Source: Macrostomum lignano
Lineage: Eukaryota
Direction of reading: 5' to 3'
Assembly (NCBI GenBank): GCA_002269645.1
Contig: NIVC01003278.1
Span: forward strand, 43,534 to 107,533
DNA: 64,000 nt
In this document: piece by piece, positions 36,438 through 59,200 of the stretch
Numbering within the stretch: the first letter of the stretch is position 1
How the letters are laid out: every line of letters begins with the position of its first letter
Translations under genes and position numbers: made by a program
The notes under the pieces: model-generated
Database searches by the model: none
What the model was told of the DNA's origin: nothing
What the model saw: the letters and a program-made list of their open reading frames with translations, nothing else

Positions 36438-37014
36438 GAGAGATCAACTCCCGCCAGGTAATGTATAGTTTAGCTAGATTTTTTGAAGTCGAAAGACACA
36501 GAGAAGACTATACTCTTGTTTTTGCTTTTATCTGGAATTTTATACACTTCAGATCCAGCATTTTTCCAGTGCTTACTAAGGAGATTAGGGTGCCATATGT
36601 CTTAATCTCTTATCTCTTGCTTGGGGTGTGTCTACTTAACTCTCTCTCTCTCTCTCTCTCTCTCGCTCTCTCTATACTGGCATGGCGTGCACAAAATAAA
36701 CCTATTGGAATTTGAAAGCGAGGCGCCGCTGGCATGCTATTGAAAGATCGAATATCTGAGTATATTATCATAAAACCTAGTATGGTGTGGTCTTGTCCGC
36801 TTAAGTATACTTGTACATGGTATGGCTCGGTTTGTTTGCACTTAAAAGTTTGCGCGTGACCGAAGCAGCTGCAAAAATAAGAGGGTGTGAGAGCTACAGT
36901 GGAAGACTTGCAAGAGTCAATTTTGCTTGCAAGCGATTTGGCTTCCCATTGTAAAATCACACTTTCTGTCTGGTACGTACATGTCATAGGCCGGTGCTCC
37001 TGTCTCTTGGTGGG

Positions 37015-37790
37015 CGCCCCTGTCTCTTGGTGGGCGCCCCTGTCTCTTGGTGGGCACCTCTGTCTCTTGGTGGGCGCCCCTGTCTCTTGGTAGGCGCCCC
37101 TGTCTCTTGGTGGGCGCCCCTGTCTCTTGGGTGGGTGCCAATGTCTCTTGTGGGCGCCTGTCTCTTGGTGGGCGCCCCTGTCTCTTGGGTGGGTGCCAAT
37201 GTCTCTTGGGTAGGTGCCAATGTCTCTTGGTGGTCGCCCCTGTCTCTTGGTTGGGCAACAATGTCTCTTGGTGGGTGCCCTATCTATTGGTGGGTGCCCC
37301 CGTCTCTTGGTCTTGGGTGGGTGCCTTGTCTCTTGGTGGGCGCCAATGTCTCTTGGGTGGGTGCCTTGTCTCTTGGGTGGGTGCCTTGTCTCTTGGTGGG
37401 CGCCATATCTCTTAGATTGGCGCCCCTGTCTCTTGATGGGCGCCCCTGTCTCTTGGTGGGCGCCAATGTCTCTTGGGTGGGTGCCTTGTCTCTTGGTGGG
37501 CGCCCCATCTCTTAGATTGGCGCCCCTGTCTCTTGATGGGCGCCCCTGTCTCTTGGTTGGGCAACAATGTCTCTCGGTGGGCGCCCCTATCTATTGGTGG
37601 GTGCCCCCGTCTCTTGGGTGTGCACCAATGTCTCTTGGTGAGCGCCCTTGTCTCTTGATGGGCACTAATGTCTCTTGGCTGGGTGCCTTGTCTCTTGGTG
37701 GGCGCCCCTGTCTTTTGGGTGGGCGCCACTGTCTGTTAGGTGAGTGCTACTGTTTTTTAGGTGGGCGCCACTGTCTCTTGGTGAGCGGCC
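37015..37790. repeat. GC-rich minisatellite, ~20-bp unit CCCCTGTCTCTTGGTGGGCG
   Basis: Tandem copies, source of several spurious ORFs. Confidence 0.95.
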
Positions 37791-38482
37791 CTTAATTCCG
37801 TGTCTCTTAGGCCTGTGGTTTCCACGTCCAAGAGGTTGCATGAGCTCTCGTCATACGTCGAGCTTGGTTTGTCTCTCGTCTCGTCGTGCTTTAGTTTTAG
37901 GAGGAACGCAGTTTTTGTGGGGAGATTTGAGGGTCCCTAGTCCTCTAGATCCATAATTATAGCTAGCTACATTACATGTATACAACAACAACAACACAAC
38001 AACAACAAAATACATTGTCAGCCAGTCAAGCGTGGGACAATGTCACATGGCACGTTTAAAGGCCTGGGCGCGAACGTAGGCCGCACCGCCGGTAGTGTCC
38101 GGGGCACCAGCATCAGCCAGCAGGCAGTCGACGAAACGCCAATATTACATGTATACAAAAGTATACTATATCTCCGGCTCATTGTTAGTGGTACGAGTAT
38201 CTATAGCTCCTTTACTTCTGCACTTTAATTCTGTCGTTACTGCATGGCTATAATCAATGCTCACACACAGTGGCAAAGAGGCTATAACCACGCATACATT
38301 TATAGGTAGCTATGTATATAGTATTGTTTTTGACAATCTAAATGATAATTTGGACATTAAAAATGAGAAACGCATACAGCGAGCTGCAGCAGCTTGCTGG
38401 CAAACTGGTATTGGCCATAGAGTCCGTGGACAATCTAATCGATGAAAAGCCATTCTAAATGAGAATTTGGACATTCAAAATA

Positions 38483-41619: not shown

Positions 41620-42960
41620 ACTAGTCATGACAAAGAAAAAACAGACTCGAAATATGGCAAGGGAGGGACTTTACTAGACACAATTAATCAGCAACTCTGG
41701 ATTGCCTTTTGAAAAAGTTCAGAGACAACGCTCACCATAACCCCATGACGCAAGCTACCTGCTTAAAGCTAGCTATCGCCGACGAATACCAGACCCAAAA
41801 TATTAGAATTGATATAAAAGTCCGTTACACGTAGCAGTAGATGGATCTTCTTAGCATCACAATCAGATACAAGAAGTGCAAATTGCCAAGAATGGAAATG
41901 TACCTAAACTCACTAGTCTAAAAAGCTGTTCAACGAAACAATGATGAAGCAGTATCTTTCTCAATGCAAAAGTTTTTGTCCACAAGTGTTGCCTCAGTTT
42001 CAAACGAGTATAGTTTGTCTCAGCTGCTGGTCATTGACCAAACGTTCAGCTTCACTGATTGACCCAAACTCCCGGTCGAGTCAATCTTGCGTTAAAACGG
42101 ATCGAACCACTCAGATCCGCTATATAGTGATCAGTGAATGCTGAGCGATGTACGGAGCGTGGTGTTTACTGTCACAGCTCAGACAACAGATAAAATTGAA
42201 CCAGTTTAAACAGCCGTCAATTAAAACGAACTCAAGTGGTTGATTTATTTTAGAATCTGGTTCATAGGCGATGACAAGACACGGCTGAGAATTGAAAAAG
42301 GATCTGCAATTCAGGAGACTCTGTCTTGATCACCTTGTCCTGAGAATCCACATAAAAGTCGTGTGTTGTTGCAGCTGATGAGATTAAGCGGGGTGAACCC
42401 TGCAAAACTTAAATCTCCCTTTTGAGCTCATAAATTCGCTTACCAATGCAATCCTTGTCTGCAGACTCGCACAACTGCATCACTTCAGTCATATGCCTGT
42501 CAATGAGTATCTTTAGGCCTCTCTAATACTTCCGCTGCCCAGCCACGCAATCTTCGTCAGCTGTGTTATTATTCAGTTCGTAGACTCTCCTGGCGTCATC
42601 ATTGGCTTCCGCTGCCGCACATGCAGTCTCATACTAGTCCAGTGCAGCGAGGTCTCCCAGCTTCTGCAGTGCGCTGTCGTGTTTGACAATCAATAGGTTT
42701 GTCACAGGCTCTTACCATGTACATTATTCTGAGAATAGGTGTTGTCAGCGCTCAATTTGACGCCGCAGCCGCTATGTTTTGTCACCCTAAAGCAAAATTT
42801 TAGATTTCCATAATGGGTCACAAGGTGGAGTGGGGGGGGGGACAAAATATTGCCATGCCCTCCATAGCTTTTACTGGGGCGGTGACGACGCCCCTGGTCA
42901 CAGCCGTCTTCCAGTTGTTCAGCGAGTCCACAGCTGACTCCAGTCCATGCAATTGCACTG
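41620..42960 (-). pseudogene. Decayed paralog of the ZnF-coiled-coil-NHL family (not in ORF track)
   Basis: Fragments in paralog order: LESAVDSLNNWKTAVT | VTNLLIVKHDSALQKLGDLAALD*YETACAAAEANDDARRVYEL | LKILIDRHMTEVMQLCE | LSCDSKHHAPYIAQHSLITI/ADLSGSIR | ALLVSDCDAKKIHLL..GLVFVGDS | GNPELLI..SLAIFRV; stops, frameshifts, deletions. Confidence 0.85.
42708..42896. mobile_element. ~189-bp insertion in the pseudogene, flanked by a 7-bp direct repeat
   Basis: GTCACAG at 42701-42707 and 42897-42903; minus-strand end begins CAGGGGCGTC (hAT-like terminus); splits the TAVT/VTNL coding segment. Confidence 0.65.
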
Positions 42961-43911
42961 CGTTCTGAGTTCGCAACTATTTCTAAATAGTTTGCAAAGG
43001 AAATTATTAGAAAGTCATGAAGGCGAAATATTATTTTTTAACCACTAAAGCCGAGAGTGCTAAACGCCGGATAACATCCTTCTTTGTATTTTAGAGTTTT
43101 GGAGCACAAAAAGTCAATATTATTTATATTTCAATCTTATTTCGAATGTTAGCATTGAATAAATGGTATTGATAAACTTTAAAAAAACGTTTCTACGCTC
43201 GTAAAATCACAAAATACTTTAAAAAGGAGAAGACACGTTTGTGTTAAAAATCTTCTGGAATATTAAAGAATACAACCAGGGCTGTCGAATCAAATTGTTT
43301 GCTGGTAAACATCAGATTATAAACAACACTGAATTGAAAGCATCTGCAAAGAACGATAAAGATTAATAATCAAATTATTTATTGCAATATACTCGTAAAT
43401 TTAAGCTACTTAGGGGAAAACTGTAACTGTAAAAATCTGCAAGGCACAAATTCAGACGATTTTACACAATAGTTAGCACAAAATCAAGTGCATATTCGCC
43501 GACAAGCAAATCGGTACAAAATATTCAGGGTCAGTCTCATAGCATGGTGGATTTTAGTTAGCAGCTCGAAATTATACAGAACCAATAAAGCGCCTTCGAG
43601 AAGGTCCAAATACCCGAATTAACCCTAAATGGTAAAATGGATTTTCCATAGGTGGCTAAACTATTTTCGGTAACGCATAGTTTACAGGAATCTTGACACT
43701 TTCAGCACATTTCTCACGACGAGGCACTTGCTTACGATAAGCTAAAAGGTAAATTTACTATTAATACTATCAAACATTAAAGTAAATTATAAATTCGTTC
43801 TTGAGCAGTGTATATAGCACCTGGAGTAGAAAAACAATTATGAAGTAAAAACATGGTCACTGATTTATATTTGTCAATGAGCACGGTTCAAAAATCGGTA
43901 AATAAATAAAA

Positions 43912-45432
43912 TCAATTCAGACTGGGAGCGTTAACTTTGAAGATGCTGACAGCATTTCCACCCTTTTGACAAATTGCAAGCATTGGCACGTCGGCGTCAA
44001 GTACATCAAGGCCGTAAGGATCGGCCATGGCAGTAGAATCGTCTGGCATTCCAACGGTTTGCAGAACTTCTCCATCTTGTTTAAATACTCGAACCAGATT
44101 CTTAATGCTTTGACTAACAAATATGAGACCTGACTGGTGAGCAACAACATCAGCAGGGGTCGGAAGTTCATATGTTGCGATAAGCCGTCCGCTAATAGTG
44201 CAAATTTTGAGTACATGATTTGCATTCCAATCTGTCACCAGGATTGAGTTGCCAAGTGGTGATAAACCTTCATAAATCACACCTGCACACTCAGAATACA
44301 TTCCTGCCAGATTAATTTTGCTTATGAACCGGGTATCACTTTTCGACCAACATAAAATACTGATGCTCTTTTGCTCCAAGAGGTAAATTTTTTCGCTGCA
44401 ACCGCCAATCGCTAAAAACTTGTAGTCCGAATCGCTCGATTTTATAACATTTCGAATGTAACCATTTAAATCTGCAACAGTTACGCGGTCGGGCTGTCCC
44501 AGAAACAGCGCTTGGCGTTTGCTGTCGCAATGAATTCCAATAGAACGTATTGACCAATCAATGTCGCAGTTGACAGTAAGCCTAACAGATCCATCGAGCG
44601 AACACAAAAGGATATGGTCTTTCTTTGAGTCCACATGGAACATTACAAAAACGCACTTTGCTGGAACTTCTGCACCGCTGCCTGAAGAAGAGCCTACTTT
44701 TACTAATCGACCTGCTGAATCAGAAGTAAAACCTTCCGTGTTTGTGCAGGCAGCGACCCACTGAGGCTTGCCATCGAGCTCCAGAATCTCAGAGTGAAGC
44801 TCGCAGATCTCTTTCTCAATTACAGTTGTGTTAGCGACCTCGCAGCGCTGCACCACTTCTCTCATTTGCCTGTCAACCAGCAGAAGCAAGTCTCGCAGAC
44901 TGCCGCTCACATCACCTACAATTCTCCGAGCATCATCAATGCCCTCTGCAGTCTCTTCTGCATCAGCCTCTTCCAGCTTGTCTTCCAAGTCAGTGCATTT
45001 CAGCTCCATCTCAGAGCTGAGTTCAAAAACTTTTCTCAAGTCGTTGGCGCTCTCAGCTGCATCAACTGCGCTATCGTACTCCTGCAGCACAGAAAACTCA
45101 GTCAAATTTTCTAGAGCACCGTCGTGTCTCTCAGTCAGTCGTGTTGTCACTGATGTTCTCCACTTTGTCAACAAGTCGAAAGCTTCATCAAGCAGGTCGT
45201 CAGCAGCCTGAAGCTCGGCAGCCAGGGTCTGCTGGTAAGTTCTTAGCTGGTCTCTCTTAGCTTTCATAGGCGCCAGTTTGTTTTGCACAGATCTCTGCAG
45301 CTCTCGCACTTTTTGTCTGTCCTGATCAAGGTGCTTCTGGCACAGAGGCTGGGGGATGCGACCACCGCAACCCGAGACGGGGGCGCCGCAGCCTCTGATG
45401 AAGCACGCATCGGAAGTCGAGGCCTCAGACAT
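43912..45432 (-). CDS. Paralog A: intronless Cx4Cx15Cx2H finger, coiled coil, NHL-like beta-propeller (RING-less TRIM-NHL-like), ~506 aa
   Basis: MSEASTSDACFIRGCGAPVSGCGGRIPQPLCQKH; helical K/E/L/Q-rich segment; NHL-type blades PADVVAHQSGLIFVSQSIKNLVRVF and DPYGLDV. Confidence 0.85.
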   Translation of the reverse strand: MSEASTSDACFIRGCGAPVSGCGGRIPQPLCQKHLDQDRQKVRELQRSVQNKLAPMKAKRDQLRTYQQTLAAELQAADDLLDEAFDLLTKWRTSVTTRLTERHDGALENLTEFSVLQEYDSAVDAAESANDLRKVFELSSEMELKCTDLEDKLEEADAEETAEGIDDARRIVGDVSGSLRDLLLLVDRQMREVVQRCEVANTTVIEKEICELHSEILELDGKPQWVAACTNTEGFTSDSAGRLVKVGSSSGSGAEVPAKCVFVMFHVDSKKDHILLCSLDGSVRLTVNCDIDWSIRSIGIHCDSKRQALFLGQPDRVTVADLNGYIRNVIKSSDSDYKFLAIGGCSEKIYLLEQKSISILCWSKSDTRFISKINLAGMYSECAGVIYEGLSPLGNSILVTDWNANHVLKICTISGRLIATYELPTPADVVAHQSGLIFVSQSIKNLVRVFKQDGEVLQTVGMPDDSTAMADPYGLDVLDADVPMLAICQKGGNAVSIFKVNAPSLN

Positions 45433-46369
45433 GGGAGCGCAACTGCAAGTTGAGATGCACAATAGTTAACTGCATGTGGTGTGTATATATTTAACAATGT
45501 AAATGCACCACGTCTACGAGTGTATAGATTTGATTACGATTATGTCGTTGGGTTTTCATCATCAATGCTTTGAGTTAAATATCTCCGGAAAAAATATGAA
45601 CCATAAAACACATCAAACAAAAAGTTAAGTTCGGTAAATGCGAGCTACATAATAAAGAAGGCCATATGCTATCTATCAAAACCGGAGGAGCATTGAAGCT
45701 ACTGGATACGAATAACCAATAAAGACGCTAAACTCGTGTAAATGTAAGTGGTTTTGTATCAATCAAGGTTTCAACGTACTATATTTCACTGCAAAAAAAG
45801 TTTTCGGTTGGTAAGAAACAGTAATACAAATACAAGAAAGTAATATAAATATACCGTTATAATATTTATTTCGTACAGATCATACAAAAAACGCGAGACA
45901 GTTTGTTGCCCAAAAACCGATTGCTGAGAAAATTCACAATCCGTTGCAACAAAAGTAGCTTTAAAGTTGACAGTCGAAAAAAATCGCTGTAAAATTGACA
46001 TCGCAAAGTAAGAAAAAAGCACCTGTTAAATACCTGGTAAATTCTTTGAATGACGTAGCATATGGATGTACAATCATAAGAACACAGCCAATGAAGTAGT
46101 AATCGAGTTTTTATAATATGTACTAAGGAAGTATTGCAATGTAAGTACATACAAAATTTAAGTCTAGAGTTGACTGAAAACAGTAAAAAAAGCTTGCTGA
46201 GAGTTTTGTCCTTCAGTTTTTTTTTCAAGCCGCCACCACCCAGAGGTAAACGCCACTGTATTTTTGTAAAGCTAAGTTTATACTTAAAATCGATATCTAG
46301 TTGTGCCTTCTTATGCACTACTTATGTCACTATATTATTATGATACATCATAATACTGCAGAAAAACTG

Positions 46370-46495
46370 CAGACTTGAAATGGCAACTGACGAATTTTAG
46401 GCACAGAACCAGCAACTCCAGATTCGCTTTTGACGAGGGTCAATTAAACAGGTTTGTCTAGTTTTCACTGCGGCAGCGCAGCCTCTGATGTAGCA
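46370..46495 (-). pseudogene. N-terminal relic of a further paralog
   Basis: Minus strand CYIRGCAAAV (46495-46466) and later KIRQL; nucleotide GCAGCCTCTGATG shared with paralog A; no in-frame ATG, stop follows. Confidence 0.6.
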
Positions 46496-47995
46496 AGCAA
46501 TTCATCCTGGTTGCCGAAAGTTGACTGAAATAAAAAAAATCGGCTGGGTGTATACGTGACGGTTATTGAATATTACCTACCTACTTATGAATATTATGTG
46601 ATACTATGAATATTATTATATAGGTAATACTATGAATATTACCTACTGAATATTACCTACCTACTCATTGAATATTACCTATATATATCAAAGAATATAA
46701 AATCTATGGTCTAAATGAAAATAAACAACGCTCTTAAATCTGAGTGCCAGGCATGGAGGAAAGAATAGAATGGAGTGCTAATCTGAGCCAGCTATTTTCG
46801 TCCCACTCGATCTTCACCTTTAGTATCCCTTCCCCCCCGTTCCTTCCTATTGGCTCGTGACTGCCATAGACAAAGTCGTTTCGTTTTCGCCCCCCTCTGA
46901 AAGGTATGTCCCAGCATAGTACGAGCTCACATCAAAATATGCTTACAGCCAATGGGAGCCATAGTGCCAGTTCGTTCGGTCGGAATGAGAAGAACTTTAA
47001 ATAATTGATTGCATATTTATTCCTAGCGATAGCACCAAAAGTATTTGTTTCATATATTTTTAGTTTACGGACTAAAGCCAAAGCTCAGGCGGAACGCGAA
47101 AATCGTTAAAAATCTACGTCGGCATTATACATAAACTATAAATATCATCTGGTCTGAAGTTGCCAACCACTGTGCGAAGAGAGTTTAAGTTAGAGGCGTC
47201 TTTGGTCTCTACCGTAGACGATTCTGAGAAAGGGAAATTGATTTGGTCGCCTGCACTTGGAGCTGAGCGCAAAGTGAATTAGCAAAAACTAAATAAAATC
47301 AGTAGAAGTGCCTGGAGTAAAAAAACCCATAAAGATACTCGTATAACGGTGTAAACAATCGCTTGTTCCAGCAAAGTCTTAATTTAACAATCTTAGACTT
47401 GGAGCTTTGCTTTGTTAATCAAAATTAACAATCAATAAGAAGTAGTCCAAATCTGATCTGTCGTGAAAAAACAACTCAAAACATCAGTACCGTTTTGAGT
47501 TTTGGAAAGATCTACCAATAGTTACTGTAAAAAAGATAATAATTCAATTAGGCACGCGGGTTAAGTCTAAGAAGAACGTGATAAAAATGTTTTCTATTAA
47601 AAATAAAGCACATAGCAATAACATCACCAGTTTCAGCTATTGGCAGAAACAAATTCAAACTACTATAAGTAATACAAACAGGAGCGCACACGTAAAATCA
47701 ACAAAATATATTCAAAAGGTAATTTGGAATTTATCGGAATTATTTTGTTAACAAGATGACGGCAATATTAAAGATCAGTAAGATTCACAAAAAAGTGATT
47801 TAACTATCAGGAGGGACATTGGGTCAATTAGACGCAACAAATCGTGAAAATGCTGACAGCCTTGCGTTTTTCTTGACAGACGGCTAGCATCGGAGGGTCG
47901 CCTTCCACGACTGCGAGGCCATATGGGTCAAACTTGTAACCACTATCAGTGCTACCAGAACCTTCTTCATGATCTTTGCTACTATTGCTACTGTC

Positions 47996-48164
47996 TTCTT
48001 CTTCTTCAGTCCTTTTCTCGCCTCGCGGCGTGGACGCTCTGCCGCCGACTCACTGGCAGGTCTTTCGATGTCTGGCCATGTTCGTGCGGGCCAGCATCCT
48101 CCCGCAGTCCGGGCACGGAGCTCTGGCGCTCTTGTAGATCCGCGCCGTAATCCCCGTCGTCATC
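47996..48164 (-). mobile_element. 5'-truncated non-LTR retroelement fragment (169 bp), 11-bp TSD, (GAA)4 tail
   Basis: TTGCTACTGTC at 47985-47995 and 48165-48175; insert encodes MTTGITARIYKSARAPCPDCGRMLARTNMARHRKTCQ*, 42-nt UTR, GAAGAAGAAGAA. Confidence 0.8.
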
Positions 48165-49618
48165 TTGCTACTGTCATCTCCTTCACTTTCGTTCTCGTCA
48201 TCTTCAGAAGCGAATTGAAGAGTCTGCAAAATGGTTCCGTCATTCAACAGGACATAAACTGAATCGGACAGACTCCGGCTAACAAAGACCAATCCGGATG
48301 AATGAACCGCAACATCGGCAGGAAATTCGAAATCGGCGGGCTCGCTCAAATCAGTGGGATACGATACTACGAGTTGGTGACTCACAATGCAAATCTTATG
48401 CAGCTGATCTGAAGCCCAATCGGTCATTAAAATGAAGTGGCCAAAAGCAGACAGACCTTCATAAAGTACACCGCTATTAGTTGGGTAGTACTTCGATACG
48501 TCAATGACAGACTGCAATTGCTCGCCATCCTTTGCCAGACAAAAAATGCTGGAATTTTTCTGCTCCAAAAGAAACAATTTGTCCGAATTTCCGGTCATAC
48601 CGACGAATTTGCATTCAGAAAGACCTAAGCTTTGGGCGTAGACGGCATGAGTTATAGAGCCACTCAGATCTGCCACAGTCACAACGCTAGACTGTGCGAT
48701 ATACAAACTTTGCCTATCGCTGTCACACTGAAGTCCAACAGCTTCCACAGACCAATCGATAGCACAGTTGACAGCTAGTCGCAATGTTCCATCAATTGAT
48801 GTGGCAAGAATATGGTCCATACCAGAGTTAACATGAAAAACTACAAACAAGCACTGAGATGTAAGGCTAATAGGCTTACTAACGACAGTTGATGCCTTCA
48901 CCAAGTTGCCTTCTGAGTTTCCAACGTATCCGTTGGTGTTGCTGCAAACTGCAATCCATTGTGGCGCACCTTCAAGCTCTAGAATTTCGCAATGAAGCTG
49001 ACACAGCTCTTTCTCTTCCGTTTGGCTCGGAGTCTCTTTTGTTTCGCAGAGTCTTGAAATTTCTTTCATTTTCACTTCATTTAGCAAGCGAAGATCCCTC
49101 AAGCCACCGCTAACATCGCCAACAACTCTGGCATCGCAATTTACTTTCTCGTTGGCTTCAAGCTTCTCTTCTAGGTCAGTGCACTTTAGCTCCATTTCAG
49201 AAGTGAGTTCAAACACCTTTCTAGTGTTTTCATCACCCTCCGCTGCAGCAATTGCACTCTCATATTCCTGCAGCATTGAAAACTCTCCTAAATTTTGCAA
49301 AGCATTGTCGTGCCTTTCAGTCAACAGAGTAGTGACAGCTGACCTCCGCTTTACCCACGAGTCCAAAGCTTCATCAAACAGATCCTCTACAGCCTGCAGC
49401 TCAACAGCCAGAGTTTGCTGACGAATCCTAATCTTGTCCCGCTCGGCAAGCATCGGCTCTAACCTAGCCTTCATCGAAATTCGTAATTCTCTAACTTTCT
49501 CTCTGTCCTGGGCCAGGTGCCTTTCACAGAGTGGCTGAGGAATCCGACCACCAAAACCGGATGCGGGGTTGACGCAACCTCGAATGAAGCACTGGTCGGA
49601 AGCAGATTGCTCAGACAT
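48050..49618 (-). CDS. Paralog B (522 aa) whose native C-terminus is displaced by an in-frame insertion; orphaned native tail at 47995-47828
   Basis: CFIRGCVNPASGFGGRIPQPLCERH, PADVAVHSSGLVFVS; same frame beyond TGA reads DSSNSSKD..FDPYGLAVVEGDPPMLAVCQEKRKAVSIFTICCV*, homologous to the paralog A tail. Confidence 0.85.
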   Translation of the reverse strand: MSEQSASDQCFIRGCVNPASGFGGRIPQPLCERHLAQDREKVRELRISMKARLEPMLAERDKIRIRQQTLAVELQAVEDLFDEALDSWVKRRSAVTTLLTERHDNALQNLGEFSMLQEYESAIAAAEGDENTRKVFELTSEMELKCTDLEEKLEANEKVNCDARVVGDVSGGLRDLRLLNEVKMKEISRLCETKETPSQTEEKELCQLHCEILELEGAPQWIAVCSNTNGYVGNSEGNLVKASTVVSKPISLTSQCLFVVFHVNSGMDHILATSIDGTLRLAVNCAIDWSVEAVGLQCDSDRQSLYIAQSSVVTVADLSGSITHAVYAQSLGLSECKFVGMTGNSDKLFLLEQKNSSIFCLAKDGEQLQSVIDVSKYYPTNSGVLYEGLSAFGHFILMTDWASDQLHKICIVSHQLVVSYPTDLSEPADFEFPADVAVHSSGLVFVSRSLSDSVYVLLNDGTILQTLQFASEDDENESEGDDSSKMTTGITARIYKSARAPCPDCGRMLARTNMARHRKTCQ

Positions 49619-50855
49619 AGATGCAGCATGAATTCAATATTGGTGGTATTCAGTTTAACGTAAATTCTTGTTGCGGAGAAATATTGTTTTCAGATGAGAT
49701 AGTGGCAGAAATTATCCAATTCTGAACACTCCAGTTACAATAACTCCTCTTAAAAGTACGTATCTAACGAGGCGAAAGAGTCTAAGGTAATCGCGTCTCG
49801 CTTCACAATCCATCACGAACAAACGATTTGGCGCTTGTAAATAAAAAAAATTACCGGTGCAATTCTGCGGCTTTGCATATTCCAAAAAATGTCTTTGAAA
49901 CGAAAGGTTGTAAAAAGGGACAAATAGTAGAGCGACTATTTGGGCTATTGAGTTCGTTTGAAGTTCGTTTGAATCTCTAACGACAATGACATGCTTTATA
50001 TTAGAGCTCGCTACATAATTAGAAACTAAACAAATCAAATGCAATTCTTTTAATGTCCAAAATAAATTAAAACTTTGGCATATATTTTTTGTTTAAAACA
50101 AAAAAGACAAACGGTACAGCTGTAAGAATTTAGCTATAAAGACACGGCGACGCCAAGTGGATTTACAATTGCCAGTAATTCCTAAAGAGGGGTTTATTAA
50201 GCTCTTCGGTTTGACAGAAACTACGTGTTAAAGCTTTAAAATAATAATAATTAATAAACAAGTTTTCACTGAAATGCCACTGCAATGTACTAGCATATTA
50301 CTGCCACAGCAAAGTAGAAACTAAATTTTCATTCAGTTGCAAATTATACAGACTTCCATAGTAATATGCAGACTTAGACAGACATGTAAAAATGCTTAAG
50401 TCTTGGATTCAGGTTTGAGTGCCATTGCATTTCTCTTAAAAAATTATAGTGCATGTAATTTATTGTAGATTTCTTATTCTTTAGTTATGCTGGAGTCAAT
50501 AATGAAAAAACGGAGATTTTTTATTTGAAGCGTAAAATCAAAGCAAAGTAAAATGACAGTTCACTGCATAAATAACAATGATACTTGAATAAAAACTACC
50601 TGAACTTTTAATTTAGCTTACAAACAAAATTGTAAAAGTAAGTAATTCAACCTAAAATTAACAATAATATGAGAAAATGCAAGTCAAATTTAACTTGAGA
50701 ATGGAAAAAAAACGTGTAGGCCGAATACAACGAACCAAAACCTCGAATTATGGAAAAAATAAAAAGCTAATGCGTGCAAAAACCTGGAACCAAAAAACAA
50801 CTATATAATTTGACTTGTAAGACGCGTCGGTCAGTCGTCGCACAATGTATAGAAA

Positions 50856-52397
50856 TCACTCGCAGTCAATGCGAATGCGGTAAACGCTGATGCTATTTCC
50901 TATTCGCTGGGACACTAGTAGCAAATCGGGTTTGCCATCAACGATGGTAAGCCGGCACGGCTTGTTCATGGGCTCATTAATTGGGCCAAAAATACTGATT
51001 GTTCCGAGGCTCTGCAACAGAAACCCGTCGTTTCTTAGGACGCGCACCATATGCTTTGAACGCTCGCTGACAAATATGAGGCCAGAGCGGTGAGCCGCAA
51101 CACCGGACGGGTCTGCGATGGTTTTTAGCGCGGTTTCTTTGCTTGGATACGATACGATTACATGACCGCTCGCGATGCAGACTTTATGTAGCAACTTAGC
51201 GTTCCAATCGGTCAGTAGCAAGGCGTTGTCTAGCACAGCCATGCTCTCAATGTGAGTACCATAGTGAGAAATACCTTTGATTGAAATAACGGACTGGACC
51301 CTACCACTGCCTTTGTCGATGCAAAACACTTGCTTGCTCTGCTCACACTGCTGTAAAGCAAATATCTTGTCCGTATTGCAGGTCATCCCGATTAGCTGGC
51401 ACTGCTGGCCAAAGTTGCTAGAGTCAACGAAACGCATCGCTTTACCGCTAAGATCTGTCATCCGTACTGAATCGGACTGAGCAACAAAGAGAGCCTGCCG
51501 TTTGCTATCGCAGCAAAGTCCGACAATTGGCTTGGACCAGTCGATATTGCTGTACACTTTTAGTCGGATAGATCCATCTATTGAGCATGCCGAAAAATGA
51601 TCAACTTTTGATGTTGAATGGAATGCAACAAAAATGCACGGCTCAGGAATGGGAACAACAATGTCATCTGCAGCCGGATCCGCCTTGATAACTCGATTCA
51701 ATGTGTCAGCGGTGAAACCTTTCGTATTGCTGCAAGATGTCACGTGAGTAGGAGAGCCCTCTAGATTAGCAATTTTGCACTGGAACTCACAGATGGAAGT
51801 CTCTTTAGAGGGCATACCTCCAGGCTCGCAAAGCTGCATCGTGTAACTCATTTGTCGGCTAATTGACAGCTGCAGATCTCTAAGGCTACCGCTAATGTCA
51901 CCAACGATTCTCTGAGCACAGTTTTGGTTATTATTGTCGAGCTCAATTTGCTCTTCCAGGTCGCTAGATTCAAGATCCATCGCGGCAGTTAGGTCAAAAA
52001 CTTTCCTAACGTCATTGTTATTCTCAGCTTCAGTGACGGCGCTTTTAAACTGTTGCAGTATGGAGAACTTGCTCAGCTTCTGCAGCACACTGTTGTGCTT
52101 TGTAGTTAGTCGGTCTAGAATAACAGTTTTCCACTTTGTCAGCAAAGCCAATACAGACTCGAACAGTTCCTCGGACTCTTCCAGTTCTGCAGCAAGGGCC
52201 TGTTGCTGCAATCGAAGAACGTTTCTGTGAGCCAGGAAAGTTTTCAGCTTATTAAGCACAGATTTGTGAAACTCTTGCACTCTCTGCTTGTCCTGTTCAA
52301 GATGCCTCTCACACAACGGATGCGGTATTCTTGCGCCAGTGCCCGAGACGGGAGCGACGCAGCCTCGGATGTAGCATTCTGGATCTGTGCCGCTCAT
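50856..52397 (-). CDS. Paralog C: Cx4Cx15Cx2H finger, coiled coil, NHL-like propeller, ~513 aa
   Basis: MSGTDPECYIRGCVAPVSGTGARIPHPLCERH; DPSGVAAHRSGLIFVSERSKHMVRVL. Confidence 0.85.
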   Translation of the reverse strand: MSGTDPECYIRGCVAPVSGTGARIPHPLCERHLEQDKQRVQEFHKSVLNKLKTFLAHRNVLRLQQQALAAELEESEELFESVLALLTKWKTVILDRLTTKHNSVLQKLSKFSILQQFKSAVTEAENNNDVRKVFDLTAAMDLESSDLEEQIELDNNNQNCAQRIVGDISGSLRDLQLSISRQMSYTMQLCEPGGMPSKETSICEFQCKIANLEGSPTHVTSCSNTKGFTADTLNRVIKADPAADDIVVPIPEPCIFVAFHSTSKVDHFSACSIDGSIRLKVYSNIDWSKPIVGLCCDSKRQALFVAQSDSVRMTDLSGKAMRFVDSSNFGQQCQLIGMTCNTDKIFALQQCEQSKQVFCIDKGSGRVQSVISIKGISHYGTHIESMAVLDNALLLTDWNAKLLHKVCIASGHVIVSYPSKETALKTIADPSGVAAHRSGLIFVSERSKHMVRVLRNDGFLLQSLGTISIFGPINEPMNKPCRLTIVDGKPDLLLVSQRIGNSISVYRIRIDCE

Positions 52398-54674
52398 TTT
52401 GCTGCAAGATACATGCAAATGCAATGTATTGATTGACAAGATAATAATATATATCAGGCATTTATCTAAGATGAGATAGGTAACCTAATTAGCTGAATGT
52501 ACCAGCATCTAAATTTTACAGTTTTTTGTGATTGAAGAAAAAAATTAAATAAAAAATATTTTACTCTATCTACCATCTGACCTCACAAACTTACATACGT
52601 CACAGGACCTAGATAAACACGAAAAAATAAAGGATACAAAAATGACTCATTTGAGTGTTTTACACTCATTGTAATAGAAACTCCTGCGATCAAGAAACAT
52701 GATTGTATAAATTATTAAAGATCCACATTAAAATAAAGCCACCAATATTTTCGAGAAAAGATTTGTATCCTTAATTTTGAGGCATTTAAATAATCAAAAG
52801 ACATAAGAAGTATACGAGATGCCGAATAAACGTCAAAAATGAATTTCAATCGAAAACAAAATCATGCAATCGCGTAAAAGTTGCTATTCAATAAAAATAG
52901 CGGCAATTTATTAAAAGTAACTTGTTAATATACGGACTCAATCGGTACATGCCTATCGACTATATTCCTAGAACTGTTCCGGCAACACGAGCACGCTGCC
53001 GTAACTCACTACGTACCGTCGTTACTCGATACTCACATTGCCGGCCGTGGCGCGTTTCAACTTATTAACTTTAATTTTATTAATGATCCAACATTGTAAA
53101 CAGCCTAATGACAACAGAATGACAGTTGAATAATTAGTTATTTCAACACATTTGACGCAATGTTATGCTTCTTTCCGTGGCTTGTAAATGACGTCATGGA
53201 CCATAGAACATTGCTTCGTTACAACGCACAGGTGATAACTGATAACGCAATTATGTTATAATTGCATATCTTTTTTTAATTTGTATGAATAAATCAAGTC
53301 TTAAGGCTTTTTGCTTTAAAGAAAAACTTTTTGTGCAACTCGCCGCCGCATAACCGATTATGATTTTGAGTAATCTGTAACTGTACAAACTTAAAGTATA
53401 GTTATGCTTTTGCACTCTGAATTTGTAGTACGGGTCAAAATTGTCACTCAAGCAGAAGTGTTTTTTGTTAAATTGTTTATTTATATTTAGTTTTTAGTTA
53501 AAATATTGTTAAAAGCAACACTCTGTTATTGCTATTATTAAGTAAACAGTTATATAGATAACAGTTGTGAAACGGTTAGTTTTTTGCATTTCGCATAGGA
53601 CTTGCAGCAGTATATAAACCGTAACAGTTATTCTCTACTCCTAAAAAACAAGTCCAAGATGTATAAACACAAAACGAAATTCCTTATATACGTAAGTAAA
53701 TCGTTTTGTTTTAACTGGGGTTCTAAAGTGCTGGTGTCTCGAAGCTTGCTGTAATATACAGAAATAAAAATAAGTACAACGTTCTGAGAGCCAGTATTTT
53801 TGTAGAAATTTCTCACTTTTTCTTCAAATTTCGAAACTTCAATTTCTATTTGTCAACCTGGAAACACAGCTATCCTAGGACTATCAATTTATTGAAATCT
53901 AAAAAGAAATAAAAAACGATTTGTTTGCGAAATCTGCAATTAAAGAAACGATTGAGATCAAAATGTCATTCCTATTAGTGCAAATTTATATTTATTAAAT
54001 CGAATATGCACGGAAAATGATCAATATCTGCAAACATCTGCCGGAATGTCAACTATGTTGTGACAGGCTATGCTCATTATTTACTAGTAAAAGCACAGCG
54101 GCAGCTGTAGTATATCAGCAAGCACAGCCTTTTGAGGAATTAAAACAGTCAATATAGCTTTGAAAACATGGAAATCGATTCCAGCATCACTAATAATTTG
54201 AAGTAGAGAAACAAAGGCGAAAAAGCGATGTAAATTTAATCCAAACGCAGAACTGAGCAAAGCATATTAGGAAATTATAGAGAAACATTCAATCTCAGCT
54301 TGATAATATAGCACGGTTAAAAGTTACAACTACTCAAAACACGTGGAACTATAATTTTATTATGAAACATACAAAAATGAAAATGCTGCTTGCCTAATTC
54401 GTTCACTCATCTCGACAATCATGCAGTAGCTACCACAGATACTAGAACAACTAGATTTGTCGCTCGCAATCGCAATTTATGTTGTGAATAAGTCTACTTG
54501 TTTTCAGTAGTTTGTCTGCGCAGTTTCTTTTAAATTAAATGTGGCAGCTGACACCGGGGTTTGCCGCCTCAGGAGCATATTGGGTGAATAATGAACAAAA
54601 AGCATTAAACTCGATGTACACAAGTGAACGCAAGACGGACAAAACTCTGCCTAGGGAGCAGGCTCAATCTAGCT

Positions 54675-56295: not shown

Positions 56296-59200
56296 CTACT
56301 CCAGAGCAGGAGGAAACAGGCGCTCTTCAACGTATTTCAATTGCCACACTTTCCCTGCCAATCGCTGGAATCTCTCCGGCCCCATTATGTCGCGCAGAGC
56401 GTCTTCGACGTCGTCTGGATCGCGCGAAGCGTCGTCAAGAACTTCGTAGCAACGTCGCAACAGTTGCAGACCGAGCTGTTGAAGACAGTCGCGCCTCAGC
56501 TGCACCATACGGTCGCGCATTCGTCCAGTACGGCCCAGGGTCTCCTCTTTAGACTCGATCGGTCCGCATTCGCTGTCGTCGGCTTCGTTGTCAACCTCCG
56601 TCGGGTTTGACGCTGACGCCAAGTCCGATGCCGCCGCCGCTCCAGACCTCGGCGAAGCTGCCGCAGCAGCCGCGGCCACAGTCAGAGTCTGGTTCATGTG
56701 CTCCACTAAATCGGCCATCTCCGCCGCCTGCTGCTGCTCGCGATCGCCTGAATTGCTTCGGCTGCCACCGCCGCCGCCGCCGCCGCCGCTAGAGCCGTTT
56801 CTATCGGCGGTTTTATCAGACACTGGCGATTGAGATTTCTTCTGTCTCTTCTGCCGCTTCTCTGAGGCATCCGCCTCGTGCTCGCTGCTGTCTCTGCCGG
56901 CATCGTTGCCGACTGCCGCCGCCGCTGGCACGGAAGCTTTCGGCGAATCGCGTGGCTGAAAATTAGCAAAAAAGAAATCGCTATTTATCTATTTTGGGGC
57001 TTGTAGCCTCGCGGTTAAGAGCGTCGAACTCACGACTGAAAAGGACCCACTCGGAACAGTTTGTAGTCCTTGAGCAAGGCACTTCAACTCTGCATTGCTT
57101 CAGTTCACCCAGCTGTAAAATGGGTGCCAGCATTAGCTGGGGTAATTGAAGGTGTGTGGCGACCCCCCCATCCTTGGGCTGAACAGCTGTACCCAGTCTT
57201 TAAAGTACCTAAAGCGGTACCTAGGTAAAAAAGCGCCCCAGAGTTGTTGCAGGGAACACGGGTAAAACAGGAACGACTCTAAAACGACGAGATGTCAGAG
57301 TAAAAATCGTTAAAGAGTCACTTTAAAAAGTAAATTTGAAGCGTCTGTCTGTCTGCCACTCTGAAACGACTTTGGGGCGCTTCTACACTGAATCTGGGGG
57401 CCGTATAGTCCCCCATATAGAGTTAGAACCGCATTTTGAATTTATAACAACAGCTTTATTTACTCTACTTGAGTTAGTAGAAATTTCAGCGCTAACACGA
57501 TTCGCTAACTCAAACAACTTCTAATGTACAAAACTTCAAACAACTCACTGAAAGTCTCGGATTGGCCGTCTTTGGTCTCATTTGCTTCTGTTTGAGCACT
57601 AGCGACTGCAGATTAGAATACTGTTCAGAGTTGGTAAATGCTGAAATTTACAAATATGTGCCATTGAATTAGATTTTCATGCATCAGATTCTATGGAGAT
57701 TTTTATGTACAGATTCTAGGGAGGTTATCATACAGATTTTAGGGAGATTTTCATGTACAGATTCTAGGGAGATTATCATGTACAGATTCAAGGGGTATAC
57801 TCATGTACAGATTCAAGGGGTATAATCATGTGCAGATTCAAGGGAGATTATCATGTACAGATTCAAGGGTATAATCATGTACAGATTCAAGGGAGATTAT
57901 CATGTACAGATTCAAGGGGTATACTCATGTACAGATTCAAGGGGTATAATAATGTACAGATTCTAGGGAGATTATCATGTACAGATTCAAGGGGTATACT
58001 CATGTACAGATTCAAGGGGTATAATCATGTGCAGATTCAAGGGAGATTATCATGTACAGATTCTAGGGAGATTATCATGTACAGATTCAAGGGGTATACT
58101 CATGTACAGATTCAAGGGGTATAATCATGTGCAGATTCAAGGGAGATTATCATGTACAGATTCTAGGGAGATTATCATGTACAGATTCAAGGGGTATACT
58201 CATGTACAGATTCAAGGGGTATAATAATGTACAGATTCTAGGGAGATTATCATATACAGATTCAAGGGGTATACTCATGTACAGATTCAAGGGGTATAAT
58301 CATGTACAGATTTTAGGGAGATTATCATGTACAGATTCAAGGGGTATACTCATGTACAGATTCAAGGGGTATAATCATGTGCAGATTCAAGGGAGATTAT
58401 CATGTACAGATTCAAGGGTATAATCATGTACAGATTCTAGGGAGATTTTCATGTACAGATTCAAGGGGTATAATCATGTACAGATTCAAGGGGTATAATC
58501 ATGTACAGATTCAAGGGAGATTATCATGTACAGATTCAAGGGGTATAATCATATACAGATTCAAGGGAGATTATCATGTACAGATTCAAGGGGTATAATC
58601 ATGTACAGATTCAAGGGAGATTTTCATGTACAGATTCAAGAGAGATTATCATGTACAGATTCAAGGGTATAATAATGTGCAGATTCAAGGGAGACTATCA
58701 TGTAAAAAAACATGTTAAATTGCGACTCACCTGGCGAATTGAGCCCCAAATGTTCGCGACGCCTTCGACGAGCGGCCGTGTTAACTCTGGGCGAAGCTTC
58801 AACAACAGCTTTTACCGCGGATGGTGTCGCTGCTGCCGCAGCCGCAGCCGCCGCAGACTCCGGCACAGCCTCAGCCTCGAGCTCCGAAGCTACCGACGAA
58901 GATTTTGGCAACTTCGGCGCTGGCGCCGTAGTCGATGGCGCCGAGGTGCACGACGAGGAGGAATTTCGTCTAGACGATGGAGACGAAAACGGAGGCATGG
59001 AAGGTTGCGGAGCCGGCGCTGCCGATGTCGGCGGTCGAGGAGGCCGTCGGACATGCTCCTGCTGGTGCTGCTGTCGTTGAAGTTGTTGCGCCGAAGATGG
59101 CGAAGGCGGCAACGGCTGCCGGCTGGCGCTGTTTGGCGCGGTGCCAGGACGTCGCGTACTTTCTAGGAATAGTTGAATACTCCGCCGAATGAACGGATCG

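What the first reader, a model, noticed from the sequence alone, without database searches (positions are those of the whole stretch)
41620..52397. Tandem birth-and-death family of intronless RING-less zinc-finger / coiled-coil / NHL-propeller genes with an unusual Cx4Cx15Cx2H finger
Five co-oriented loci in ~11 kb: pseudogene, intact A, N-terminal relic, TE-modified B, intact C. All intact copies keep C[FY]IRGCxxPxSGxGxRIPxPLCxxH, which sits where a B-box would but does not match the canonical B-box spacing; it resembles CxxxGC..CxxH fingers. The propellers are highly diverged between paralogs while the finger is conserved. TRIM-NHL proteins bind RNA or protein ligands via the propeller (established). 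A conserved N-terminal module with fast-evolving sensor propellers and rapid turnover suggests a lineage-specific innate-immune or RNA-surveillance receptor family (inference). This is the best candidate for an undescribed system in the window.
Basis: partly seen in the sequence, partly recalled or inferred. Interest (0 to 1): 0.75.

Follow-up and report, generated by a model that had tools for sequence, protein, structure and literature searches.

The report
Flatworm-specific RING-less TRIM-NHL-like gene cluster
This is a real tandem cluster of intronless genes from the flatworm Macrostomum lignano, encoding a previously undescribed protein family that joins an unclassifiable four-ligand zinc finger to a TRIM-type coiled coil and an NHL propeller; its architecture is clear but its function, including the proposed immune role, is untested.

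Summary
The core observation holds. On the minus strand lie three intact single-exon ORFs: A (43915-45432), B (48053-49618) and C (50859-52397). There is also a stop-ridden pseudogene (42123-42943) and a short 5' relic (46466-46498).

All three ORFs carry C-x4-C-x15-C-x2-H. The three Cys are invariant and the His nearly so across 23-26 family members. The window is Macrostomum lignano. Every named relative is an M. lignano "hypothetical protein"; the only others are unlabelled JGI contigs.

AlphaFold2 (pLDDT 87) gives finger, then a 97-residue helix and two shorter helices, then a beta-propeller. The propeller's best sequence and fold matches are NHL domains of Thin/TRIM32, TRIM2, TRIM3, TRIM71, Mei-P26 and Brat.

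The finger matches no Pfam family, no solved structure, and neither B-box nor A20 profiles. No RING or B-box is encoded within 40-58 kb.

A collinear second copy of the array (94-98% identical) and another tandem array show birth-and-death, gene conversion and pN/pS of about 0.35-0.5. These are constrained genes, not fast "sensor" propellers. The most conserved block of the protein lies inside the propeller.

B carries a 180-bp stop-bearing insertion that the second copy lacks. A TE origin is not shown.

Verdict: a new variant of the TRIM-NHL kind, of moderate interest.

The parts
42123..42943 (-). Pseudogene of the family, covering roughly residues 80-321 (coiled coil to mid-propeller). It has several stops and frameshifts and retains no finger and no distal propeller.
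   Evidence: tblastn E 8e-16 and 4e-16. Family-HMM pieces are collinear, with E 4.6e-5, 1e-4 and 1.7e-3. The region is shared with the second copy of the array, L003.
43915..45432 (-). Gene A: intact single-exon CDS of 506 aa (stop codon 43912-43914). The finger is encoded at 45331-45405.
   Evidence: The L003 copy A' is intact; pN/pS 0.35.
45443..45448 (-). TTGCAG splice-acceptor motif 10 nt upstream of A's ATG. It fits the M. lignano SL trans-splice acceptor consensus [T/C]TNCAG.
   Evidence: The consensus is from PMC8629364. The same motif lies 4 nt upstream of C's ATG and 4 or 10 nt upstream in five L001 copies; it is absent in B.
46466..46498 (-). Short 5' relic of a family member: the first half of the finger, 'ACYIRGCAAAV', followed by a frameshifted 'SGVAGSVPK'.
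   Evidence: 27/32 nt identical to A. Shared with L003. Too short for statistical support on its own.
48053..49618 (-). Gene B: an open 522-aa ORF (stop codon 48050-48052). The last ~35 propeller residues are replaced by an insertion-derived tail that ends in a C-x2-C-x12-H-x4-C-like peptide. The finger is encoded at 49517-49591.
   Evidence: The GenBank model P0180 (BOX15_Mlig022866g5) is partial.
47985..48184 (-). The 180-bp in-frame insertion in B together with both copies of its 20-bp imperfect direct repeat (48184-48165 and 48004-47985). It carries the TGA that truncates B.
   Evidence: Absent from L003's B'. No other copy and no protein homologue.
47840..47947 (-). Displaced original 3' coding end of B (last propeller strands). 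It is still in the same frame and 56% identical to A.
   Evidence: HMM positions 484-517, E 6e-4.
50859..52397 (-). Gene C: intact single-exon CDS of 513 aa (stop codon 50856-50858). The finger is encoded at 52302-52376. This protein was the one modelled with AlphaFold2.
   Evidence: The L003 copy C' differs at 6 nucleotides.

Best explanation
The region is a tandem array of intronless genes of a Macrostomum-restricted family derived from TRIM-NHL proteins.

Each protein has three parts:
- An orphan single-zinc finger, C-x(2,4)-C-x15-C-x2-H. Its last two ligands sit at the N-terminal turn of the first helix.
- A TRIM-like helical region: one helix of ~97 residues plus two shorter helices.
- A C-terminal NHL beta-propeller.

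RING and B-box are absent, so the proteins cannot act as E3 ligases on their own.

Most likely mechanism (inferred): they form antiparallel coiled-coil dimers as TRIMs do. A dimer would present two propellers and two fingers and act as a non-catalytic binder or adaptor. The NHL propeller would be the ligand-binding module, more probably for proteins than for RNA. The finger would be a second, conserved interaction surface.

The family evolves by tandem duplication, gene conversion and pseudogenisation, under moderate purifying selection.

Shown: architecture, relationship of the propeller, absence of RING and B-box, lineage restriction, and mode of evolution.
Inferred: dimerisation, zinc binding, kind of ligand, and biological role.
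For: ORFs and motif. The three Cys are invariant and the His nearly so across 23-26 members.

Propeller:
- The family profile hits NHL domains of Thin (7.7e-13), TRIM71, TRIM2, TRIM3 and Brat.
- The AF2 model has pLDDT 87.3, with helices H30-126, H130-157 and H168-189 and a propeller at 203-508.
- Foldseek's best matches are NHL domains of Thin, TRIM2, TRIM3, TRIM71, Mei-P26 and Brat, with E down to 8e-14 and TM (target-normalised) 0.71-0.79.

No RING or B-box: regex, all frames, 40-58 kb; Pfam; hhalign 0.6%, with positive controls.

Single-exon models: in L003 the gene spans equal the CDS lengths.

Functional constraint:
- pN/pS between the two copies of the array is 0.35 for A/A' and 0.42 for B/B'.
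- It is 0.3-0.5 among L001 paralogs, and no window exceeds 1.
- A conserved [T/C]TNCAG acceptor lies 4 or 10 nt before the ATG in 7 of 8 copies.

Birth-and-death:
- Pseudogene and relic.
- L001 holds 5 full copies, one with a premature stop, plus 3 fragments in 31 kb.
- A gene-conversion tract with pS~0 over residues 59-128.

Lineage restriction: every hit that matched beyond the NHL repeat region and whose source I looked up (30) was M. lignano or an unlabelled JGI contig.

Protein rather than RNA ligand: 15 of 20 propellers have pI 4.5-6.7.
Against: - No experimental or expression evidence was found.
- Zinc binding and dimerisation are not tested. The N-terminal model has no significant structural neighbour: best Foldseek E is 1.6, and the KAP1 RBCC match is not significant. 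'TRIM-like coiled coil' therefore rests on helix lengths and order only.
- Five of 20 propellers are basic (pI 7.6-9.0; four of them 8.2-9.0), including C, so RNA binding is not excluded for some members.
- Blade number could not be checked because no coordinates were available. DSSP gives 26 strands.
- The acceptor just upstream of the ATG leaves open a cis-spliced upstream exon. The reading frame stays open across it.
- UniProt automatic names label some members 'RING-type' or 'B box-type domain-containing'. I take these to reflect weak profile matches to the finger.
Confidence: 0.6

Rival explanations
1. RNA-binding post-transcriptional regulators that work like Brat, NCL-1, LIN-41 or Mei-P26. 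The NHL top surface would bind specific RNA motifs, and the coiled coil and finger would recruit repression machinery.
For: The nearest propeller relatives include the RNA-binding NHL domains of TRIM71/LIN-41, Brat and Mei-P26. Brat-type proteins also lack a RING (established knowledge). Some members, including C, have basic propellers with pI 8.2-9.0.
Against: Most propellers are acidic, with net charge down to -19. Thin/TRIM32, TRIM2 and TRIM3 match as well as or better than the RNA binders. No RNA-contact residues could be mapped without coordinates.
Confidence: 0.2
2. A diversifying innate-immune or selfish-element surveillance receptor family. A conserved signalling N-terminus would be paired with propellers that evolve to track pathogens or transposons, by analogy with TRIM5 or finTRIM expansions.
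For: Lineage-specific expansion into dozens of loci in tandem arrays with pseudogenes. Propeller charge varies widely between paralogs. pN/pS rises to 0.7-0.9 in parts of the distal propeller.
Against: No window has pN/pS above 1. Pairs between the two copies of the array give 0.24-0.45. Family-wide, the coiled coil is as variable as the propeller, and the best-conserved block lies in the propeller. A, B and C are ancient paralogs with dS saturated. No infection or expression data exist.
Confidence: 0.15
3. The proteins are ordinary TRIM E3 ligases whose RING and B-box were missed. Either these lie on an upstream exon joined at the acceptor before the ATG, or the finger is itself a degenerate half-RING or B-box.
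For: A conserved splice acceptor lies 4 or 10 nt upstream of the ATG, always in the same phase, and the frame is open across it. UniProt automatic names for some members are 'RING-type' or 'B box-type'. C-x2-C...C-x2-H resembles the first half of the RING ligand pattern (my own reading of the pattern, not tested).
Against: No RING or B-box pattern occurs in any frame within 40-58 kb. The acceptor fits the SL trans-splice consensus. GenBank models are single-exon. The finger gives no Pfam, PDB or hhalign signal, while real B-boxes of the same length score 35-50 bits. It has only four ligands, not eight.
Confidence: 0.05
4. The cluster is a decaying remnant with no current function.
For: One pseudogene, one relic, and B truncated by an insertion. 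L1c in the other array has a premature stop.
Against: A and C are intact in both copies of the array, with pN/pS 0.35-0.58. There are dozens of intact paralogs genome-wide. The zinc ligands are invariant.
Confidence: 0.03

Closest known systems
RING-less TRIM-NHL proteins (Drosophila Brat, C. elegans NCL-1)
   Same: No RING. A coiled coil is followed by a C-terminal NHL propeller. The Brat NHL domain is a significant sequence and fold match.
   Different: Brat and NCL-1 keep two canonical B-boxes. Here no B-box exists, and an unrelated 4-ligand C2CH finger caps the coiled coil. Those proteins are conserved as single genes, whereas this is a lineage-specific multigene family.
Canonical TRIM-NHL E3 ligases (TRIM2, TRIM3, TRIM32/Thin, TRIM71/LIN-41, Mei-P26)
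   Same: They are the best sequence and structure matches for the propeller (E 1e-13 to 1e-7; TM 0.71-0.79). The order and lengths of the helices between the finger and the propeller are similar.
   Different: There is no RING, B-box or filamin domain. No E3 activity is expected. Pfam's NHL model reaches only 16.7 bits in C, against a cut-off of 20.
Lineage-specific TRIM expansions (e.g. fish finTRIM, primate TRIM5 clusters)
   Same: Tandem arrays, birth-and-death evolution, and variable C-terminal ligand-binding domains.
   Different: Those families keep RING and B-box, use PRY-SPRY rather than NHL, and show clear positive selection. Here pN/pS stays below 1.
Small treble-clef-type fingers with similar ligand spacing (A20-type C-x(2,4)-C-x11-C-x2-C; THAP C-x(2,4)-C-x35-53-C-x2-H)
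   Same: An N-terminal C-x(2,4)-C knuckle, with a final ligand pair at the start of a helix (secondary structure; pattern).
   Different: The spacing is 15 residues. hhalign against A20 fingers gives probability 0.3%. Neither zf-A20 nor THAP was among the Pfam hits listed for ten fingers at E<=10. No AVPTIF box is present.

Membership tests
TRIM / RBCC family | N-terminal RING finger (8 zinc ligands, C3HC4 cross-brace) | tested here: not met
   Only 4 ligands precede the helix. No RING pattern occurs in any frame of 40-58 kb. No Pfam RING hit.
TRIM / RBCC family | One or two B-box zinc fingers directly before the coiled coil | tested here: not met
   Pfam zf-B_box gives no hit at E<=10 for 10 fingers, while six canonical B-box2 segments score 35-50 bits. 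hhalign of the finger profile against the B-box2 profile gives probability 0.6%. No PDB sequence hit.
TRIM / RBCC family | Long coiled coil (H1 of ~100 residues plus shorter back-folding helices) that forms an antiparallel dimer | tested here: inconclusive
   AF2 gives H30-126, H130-157 and H168-189 with pLDDT above 90. That is the TRIM helix order and length. However, Foldseek of the N-terminal model finds no significant TRIM match, and dimerisation could not be modelled.
TRIM-NHL subfamily (class VII) | C-terminal six-bladed NHL beta-propeller | tested here: met
   The profile hits Thin, TRIM71, TRIM2, TRIM3 and Brat NHL domains at E 7.7e-13 to 5e-7. Foldseek gives E 8e-14 and TM 0.71-0.79 to the same domains. 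Blade number was not verified: DSSP gives 26 strands and no coordinates were available.
TRIM-NHL subfamily (class VII) | Filamin/Ig domain between coiled coil and NHL (present in TRIM2, TRIM3 and TRIM71, absent in TRIM32 and Brat) | tested here: not met
   Only about 13 residues separate H3 from the propeller. No Pfam filamin hit.
THAP zinc finger | C-x(2,4)-C-x(35-53)-C-x2-H with a C-terminal AVPTIF box | tested here: not met
   The spacing is 15-16 residues in all 26 fingers. THAP was not among the Pfam hits listed at E<=10.
A20-type zinc finger | C-x(2,4)-C-x11-C-x2-C matching Pfam PF01754 | tested here: not met
   zf-A20 was not among the Pfam hits listed at E<=10. hhalign against four Pfam-verified A20 fingers gives probability 0.3%.
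Death-fold (CARD) domain | Six-helix bundle of ~90 residues | tested here: not met
   A weak NLRP1 CARD sequence hit appeared (E 0.004-0.07). AF2 shows that stretch to be part of one continuous 97-residue helix. No Pfam CARD hit in 18 members.

The most novel reading that the evidence does not exclude
An orphan C2CH zinc finger has replaced RING and B-box at the tip of a TRIM-type coiled coil. This would create a flatworm-specific family of non-catalytic dimeric receptors. Dozens of tandemly duplicating paralogs, with differently charged NHL propellers, would recognise diverse targets such as pathogens, transposon products or gamete proteins. The finger would be a new interaction or signalling module.
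Probability: 0.12. Interest if true: 0.65.

Novelty: new variant of a known kind. Interest (0 to 1): 0.4.

Why it matters
TRIM-NHL proteins are conserved regulators of stem cells, the germline and neural development. Their domain logic (RING, B-box, coiled coil, NHL) is considered stable.

This family keeps the coiled coil and propeller. It replaces both zinc modules with one finger that has no detectable relative, and it then expanded into dozens of tandem copies in a regeneration and stem-cell model animal.

If the finger is a genuine new module, it offers a natural experiment on what the RING and B-box end of a TRIM scaffold is needed for. It would also give a handle on lineage-specific biology in Macrostomum, where transgenesis and RNAi are available.

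If the family proves to be one more uncharacterised expansion with redundant members, the value is mainly correct annotation of about 60 'hypothetical proteins'.

Tried and rejected
1. CARD or death-fold in the helical region. A weak NLRP1 CARD hit appeared. It was rejected by AF2, which shows a single long helix, and by Pfam on 18 members.
2. Finger as B-box. Rejected by Pfam with positive controls and by hhalign.
3. Finger as A20-type. Rejected by hhalign.
4. Finger as THAP or WRC. Only a chance-level WRC match, E 0.03.
5. Finger profile against PDB sequences. Nothing relevant.
6. Foldseek of the finger plus coiled-coil model. No significant neighbour.
7. Upstream RING or B-box exon. Regex over six frames of 40-58 kb found none.
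8. TE origin of B's insertion. No second copy in the window or L001, and no protein sharing words with its peptide.
9. Relatives in JGI metagenome contigs.
10. Profile search with the N-terminal half. It returned a single known member and was uninformative.
11. Literature and supplementary tables for the family or its gene IDs. Nothing found; one table was stored truncated.
12. A possible sixth relic at 54457-54510. HMM E 0.055 and the peptide is full of stops; treated as chance.
13. Domain-wide positive selection on the propeller. Not found.

Full report
**What is in the sequence**

The minus strand of 42-52.4 kb holds three long ORFs with ATG starts:
- A: 43915-45432, 506 aa
- B: 48053-49618, 522 aa
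- C: 50859-52397, 513 aa

They are paralogs at 39-51% amino-acid identity. All carry C[FY]IRGCxxPxSGxGxRIPxPLCxxH near the N-terminus, which is C-x4-C-x15-C-x2-H. A regex scan finds exactly three such fingers in 40-58 kb.

tblastn and a family HMM run on six-frame peptides find a fourth, broken copy at 42123-42943. It is collinear with HMM positions 80-321 and interrupted by stops.

Between A and B, at 46466-46498, lies an 11-codon remnant, 'ACYIRGCAAAV'. It is followed by a frameshifted 'SGVAGSVPK' and preceded by a TTTCAG acceptor and an ATG. At the DNA level, 27 of 32 bases match A's finger. It is credible as a relic but too short to be significant alone.

**Gene B**

Relative to A and C, B carries extra sequence in the last blade. 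The collinear second copy of the array (L003) shows that part of this, an acidic Ser-rich loop, is older. A further 180 bp is specific to the window copy. It is in frame, flanked by 20-bp imperfect direct repeats, and contains the TGA that ends the ORF. It adds a C-x2-C-x12-H-x4-C-like tail. The original last strands still lie downstream in the same frame, at 47840-47947.

The insertion has no other copy in the window or in L001, and its peptide shares no words with any database protein. 'Insertion-modified' is shown; 'TE-modified' is not.

**Organism and family**

Every named relative is a Macrostomum lignano 'hypothetical protein' from assembly GCA_002269645.1. B itself is the partial GenBank model BOX15_Mlig022866g5, on a contig of the same length (107,533 bp) as the one carrying the window's other two genes. 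The window is therefore M. lignano.

An exhaustive HMMER scan of 1.84 billion cluster representatives found about 30 hits that match beyond the NHL repeat region, many of them across finger, coiled coil and propeller. Below these came only generic NHL-repeat proteins.

All 30 representatives I looked up were M. lignano, about 60 accessions in total, or unlabelled JGI/IMG contigs.

One JGI contig (L002, sample 3300040775) encodes a complete intronless 533-aa member with the same finger. It is at most 33% identical to any M. lignano member. It has ~95% variants and a 43% paralog in JGI data. So at least one unidentified organism also has the family.

No paper in the searchable library mentions the family.

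**Architecture**

Pfam recognises almost nothing: one sub-threshold NHL repeat in C, 16.7 bits against a cut-off of 20.

A family profile hits the NHL domains of Drosophila Thin (E 7.7e-13), TRIM71, TRIM2, TRIM3 and Brat among solved structures.

AlphaFold2 on a 23-sequence alignment gives a confident model (pLDDT 87.3, pTM 0.68):
- a small beta-bridged finger, residues 7-29
- a continuous helix, residues 30-126
- helices 130-157 and 168-189
- a 13-residue linker
- a propeller, residues 203-508

Foldseek's best matches are the NHL domains of Thin, TRIM2, TRIM3, TRIM71, Mei-P26 and Brat, with E down to 8e-14 and target-normalised TM 0.71-0.79. Seven-bladed WD40 proteins match less well, at 0.53-0.60.

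I could not count blades directly because no coordinates were available. DSSP shows 26 strands.

The helix order and lengths are those of a TRIM coiled coil. This is by analogy only. A separate model of residues 1-211 (pLDDT 88) has no significant structural neighbour, and KAP1 RBCC appears only at rank 21, not significant.

A weak NLRP1 CARD sequence hit is explained away by the single long helix and by the absence of any CARD hit in 18 members.

**The finger**

Across 26 fingers the three Cys are invariant and the His nearly so; one member has Tyr. The first spacer is 4 residues, or 2 in one subfamily. The second spacer is 15 or 16 residues. In the model the last pair, C29-x2-H32, opens the long helix. 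That is the general layout of treble-clef fingers, which is my inference.

The finger matches nothing known:
- Ten fingers give no meaningful Pfam hit at E<=10; the best is WRC at E 0.03.
- The finger profile finds no zinc finger among PDB sequences.
- hhalign probability is 0.6% against a B-box2 profile built from six segments. Those segments were written from memory and each was verified by Pfam at 35-50 bits.
- hhalign probability is 0.3% against Pfam-verified A20 fingers.
- THAP is excluded by the spacing.

UniProt's automatic names call some members 'RING-type', 'B box-type' or 'Tripartite motif-containing protein 2'. These labels disagree with each other. I take them to reflect weak profile matches.

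No RING or B-box pattern exists in any frame of 40-58 kb.

**Gene structure and expression signals**

In L003 the GenBank gene spans equal the CDS lengths, so the models are single-exon.

Seven of eight copies examined (A, C and five in L001, but not B) have TTGCAG or TTTCAG ending 4 or 10 nt before the ATG. This fits the M. lignano SL trans-splice acceptor consensus [T/C]TNCAG; about 30% of the worm's genes are trans-spliced (PMC8629364).

Trans-splicing is therefore the likeliest reading. The frame is open across the acceptor, so a cis-spliced upstream coding exon is not formally excluded.

No expression data for these genes were found in the supplements I could search.

**Evolution**

L003 (contig NIVC01000358.1) is a collinear second copy of the whole array, C'-B'-A'-pseudogene, followed by MBOAT. 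It is 94-98% identical at the DNA level. This is expected in this neopolyploid genome.
- The pseudogene and relic are shared, so they predate the split.
- C' and A' are intact.
- B' lacks the 180-bp insertion but has a T3-versus-T4 homopolymer frameshift, which may be an assembly error.
- pN/pS is 0.35 for A/A' (coiled coil 0.24, NHL 0.45) and 0.42 for B/B'. C/C' differ at only 6 sites.

A second array, L001 (contig NIVC01000989.1), has five full-length copies, one with a premature stop, and three fragments in 31 kb.
- Its intact copies are 77-86% identical, with dN/dS 0.3-0.5 in both the coiled coil and the propeller.
- Sliding windows never exceed 1. The maximum is 0.92 at residues 312-340, and values are 0.7-0.86 over residues 399-468.
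- Synonymous divergence is near zero across residues 59-128, a gene-conversion tract in the middle of H1.

A, B and C are old paralogs with dS saturated.

Family-wide column entropy is 1.81 bits for the finger, 2.3 for the helices and 2.17 for the propeller. The best-conserved block of the whole protein is in the propeller: residues 291-318 of C, GLHCDSxRQxLFxAQ...V.V.DLSG, with D297, Q301, L303 and G318 invariant.

So the family shows birth-and-death under moderate purifying selection. It does not show a conserved head with a free-running sensor domain.

**How it most likely works**

Shown:
- There is no RING and no B-box, so no intrinsic E3 activity is expected.
- The C-terminus is a TRIM-NHL-type propeller.
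- The helical region has TRIM-like helix order and lengths; a TRIM coiled-coil fold is not shown.

Inferred:
- H2 and H3 total about 50 residues against 97 for H1. If they fold back along H1, they would place the propeller near the middle of an antiparallel dimer, with one finger at each end. This is the arrangement in TRIM5, TRIM20 and TRIM25 (established structural knowledge).
- Such a dimer would be a bivalent, non-catalytic binder or adaptor.
- Fifteen of 20 propellers are acidic (pI 4.5-6.7), and net charge ranges from -19 to +6. This favours protein ligands over RNA for most members and indicates diversified surfaces. The basic members, C among them, could still bind RNA as Brat and LIN-41 do.

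I give the architecture-plus-adaptor reading 0.6. The rivals are:
- Brat-like RNA regulator: 0.2
- diversifying immune or surveillance receptor: 0.15
- hidden canonical TRIM: 0.05
- non-functional remnant: 0.03

**Comparison, novelty and limits**

The family works most like, and its propeller descends from, TRIM-NHL proteins. The closest architectural parallels are the RING-less Brat and NCL-1.

It fails two of the three defining TRIM features, RING and B-box, both tested and not met. It should therefore be called TRIM-NHL-like or TRIM-NHL-derived, not a TRIM. The finger is an orphan. I rate it a new variant of a known kind.

Limits:
- no model coordinates
- no expression data
- no sequences from other Macrostomum species
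- short fingers give little statistical power
- one protein search and two metagenome scans returned essentially nothing

Noticed in passing
window 24000-28500 (ORF 25040-27820, + strand): A GC-rich (63-69%) LTR-retrotransposon pol ORF with reverse transcriptase, RNase H, integrase zinc-binding and integrase core domains (Ty3/gypsy-like). A 151-bp x 8 satellite lies next to it at 29147-30363.
   Followed up: partly
window 31479-35440 (- strand): An MBOAT-family acyltransferase gene downstream of the array. The same gene follows the array in the second copy L003, which confirms collinearity.
   Followed up: partly
window 58636-59433 and 59813-60445 (- strand): Two exons of a serine/threonine protein kinase gene (Pfam Pkinase E 3.5e-50), upstream of the array.
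   Followed up: no
window 1-22000, 36999-37792, 57677-58704: An unusually dense set of minisatellites with periods of 11-151 bp and up to 50 copies. Examples are 24 bp x 49 at 11026-12213 and 25 bp x 41 at 57677-58704. They produce extreme GC skew and spurious long ORFs.
   Followed up: no
window 45443-45448 and 52402-52407; L001 upstream of each copy: A conserved [T/C]TNCAG acceptor lies 4 or 10 nt before the ATG, always in the same phase, in 7 of 8 family copies but not in B. It is a likely SL trans-splice site.
   Followed up: partly
L001 (NIVC01000989.1), codons 59-128 of the copies: Synonymous divergence is near zero in the middle of the long helix, against 0.1-0.46 elsewhere. This indicates a recent gene-conversion tract among tandem paralogs.
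   Followed up: partly
L001 10001-21182: The GenBank model for P0005 spans 11 kb. It joins an N-terminal fragment copy to the distal part of another copy (L1c, which has a premature stop). It is either a chimeric annotation or real splicing between tandem copies.
   Followed up: no
L003 ~6378-6382 vs window ~48430: The only lesion in B' is a T3 versus T4 homopolymer length difference. This is typical of long-read assembly error, so B' may be intact in reality.
   Followed up: partly
window 50230-50584: About 355 bp in the C-B intergenic region is present in the window but absent from the second copy of the array, L003.
   Followed up: no
L002 (JGI sample 3300040775, contig Ga0450778_159907): A complete intronless 533-aa family member from an unidentified organism. 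It is at most 33% identical to M. lignano members and has ~95% variants and a 43% paralog in JGI data. The family is therefore not confined to the reference species.
   Followed up: partly
residues 83-147 of the family profile (window C approx. 51957-52149): A reproducible but weak sequence similarity to the NLRP1 CARD (E 0.004-0.07). It lies within what AF2 predicts to be one continuous helix and is probably a helical-composition artefact.
   Followed up: yes
window 54457-54510 (- strand): A weak family-HMM match (E 0.055) to the conserved propeller motif, in a peptide full of stops. It is probably chance but could be a sixth, very decayed relic.
   Followed up: partly
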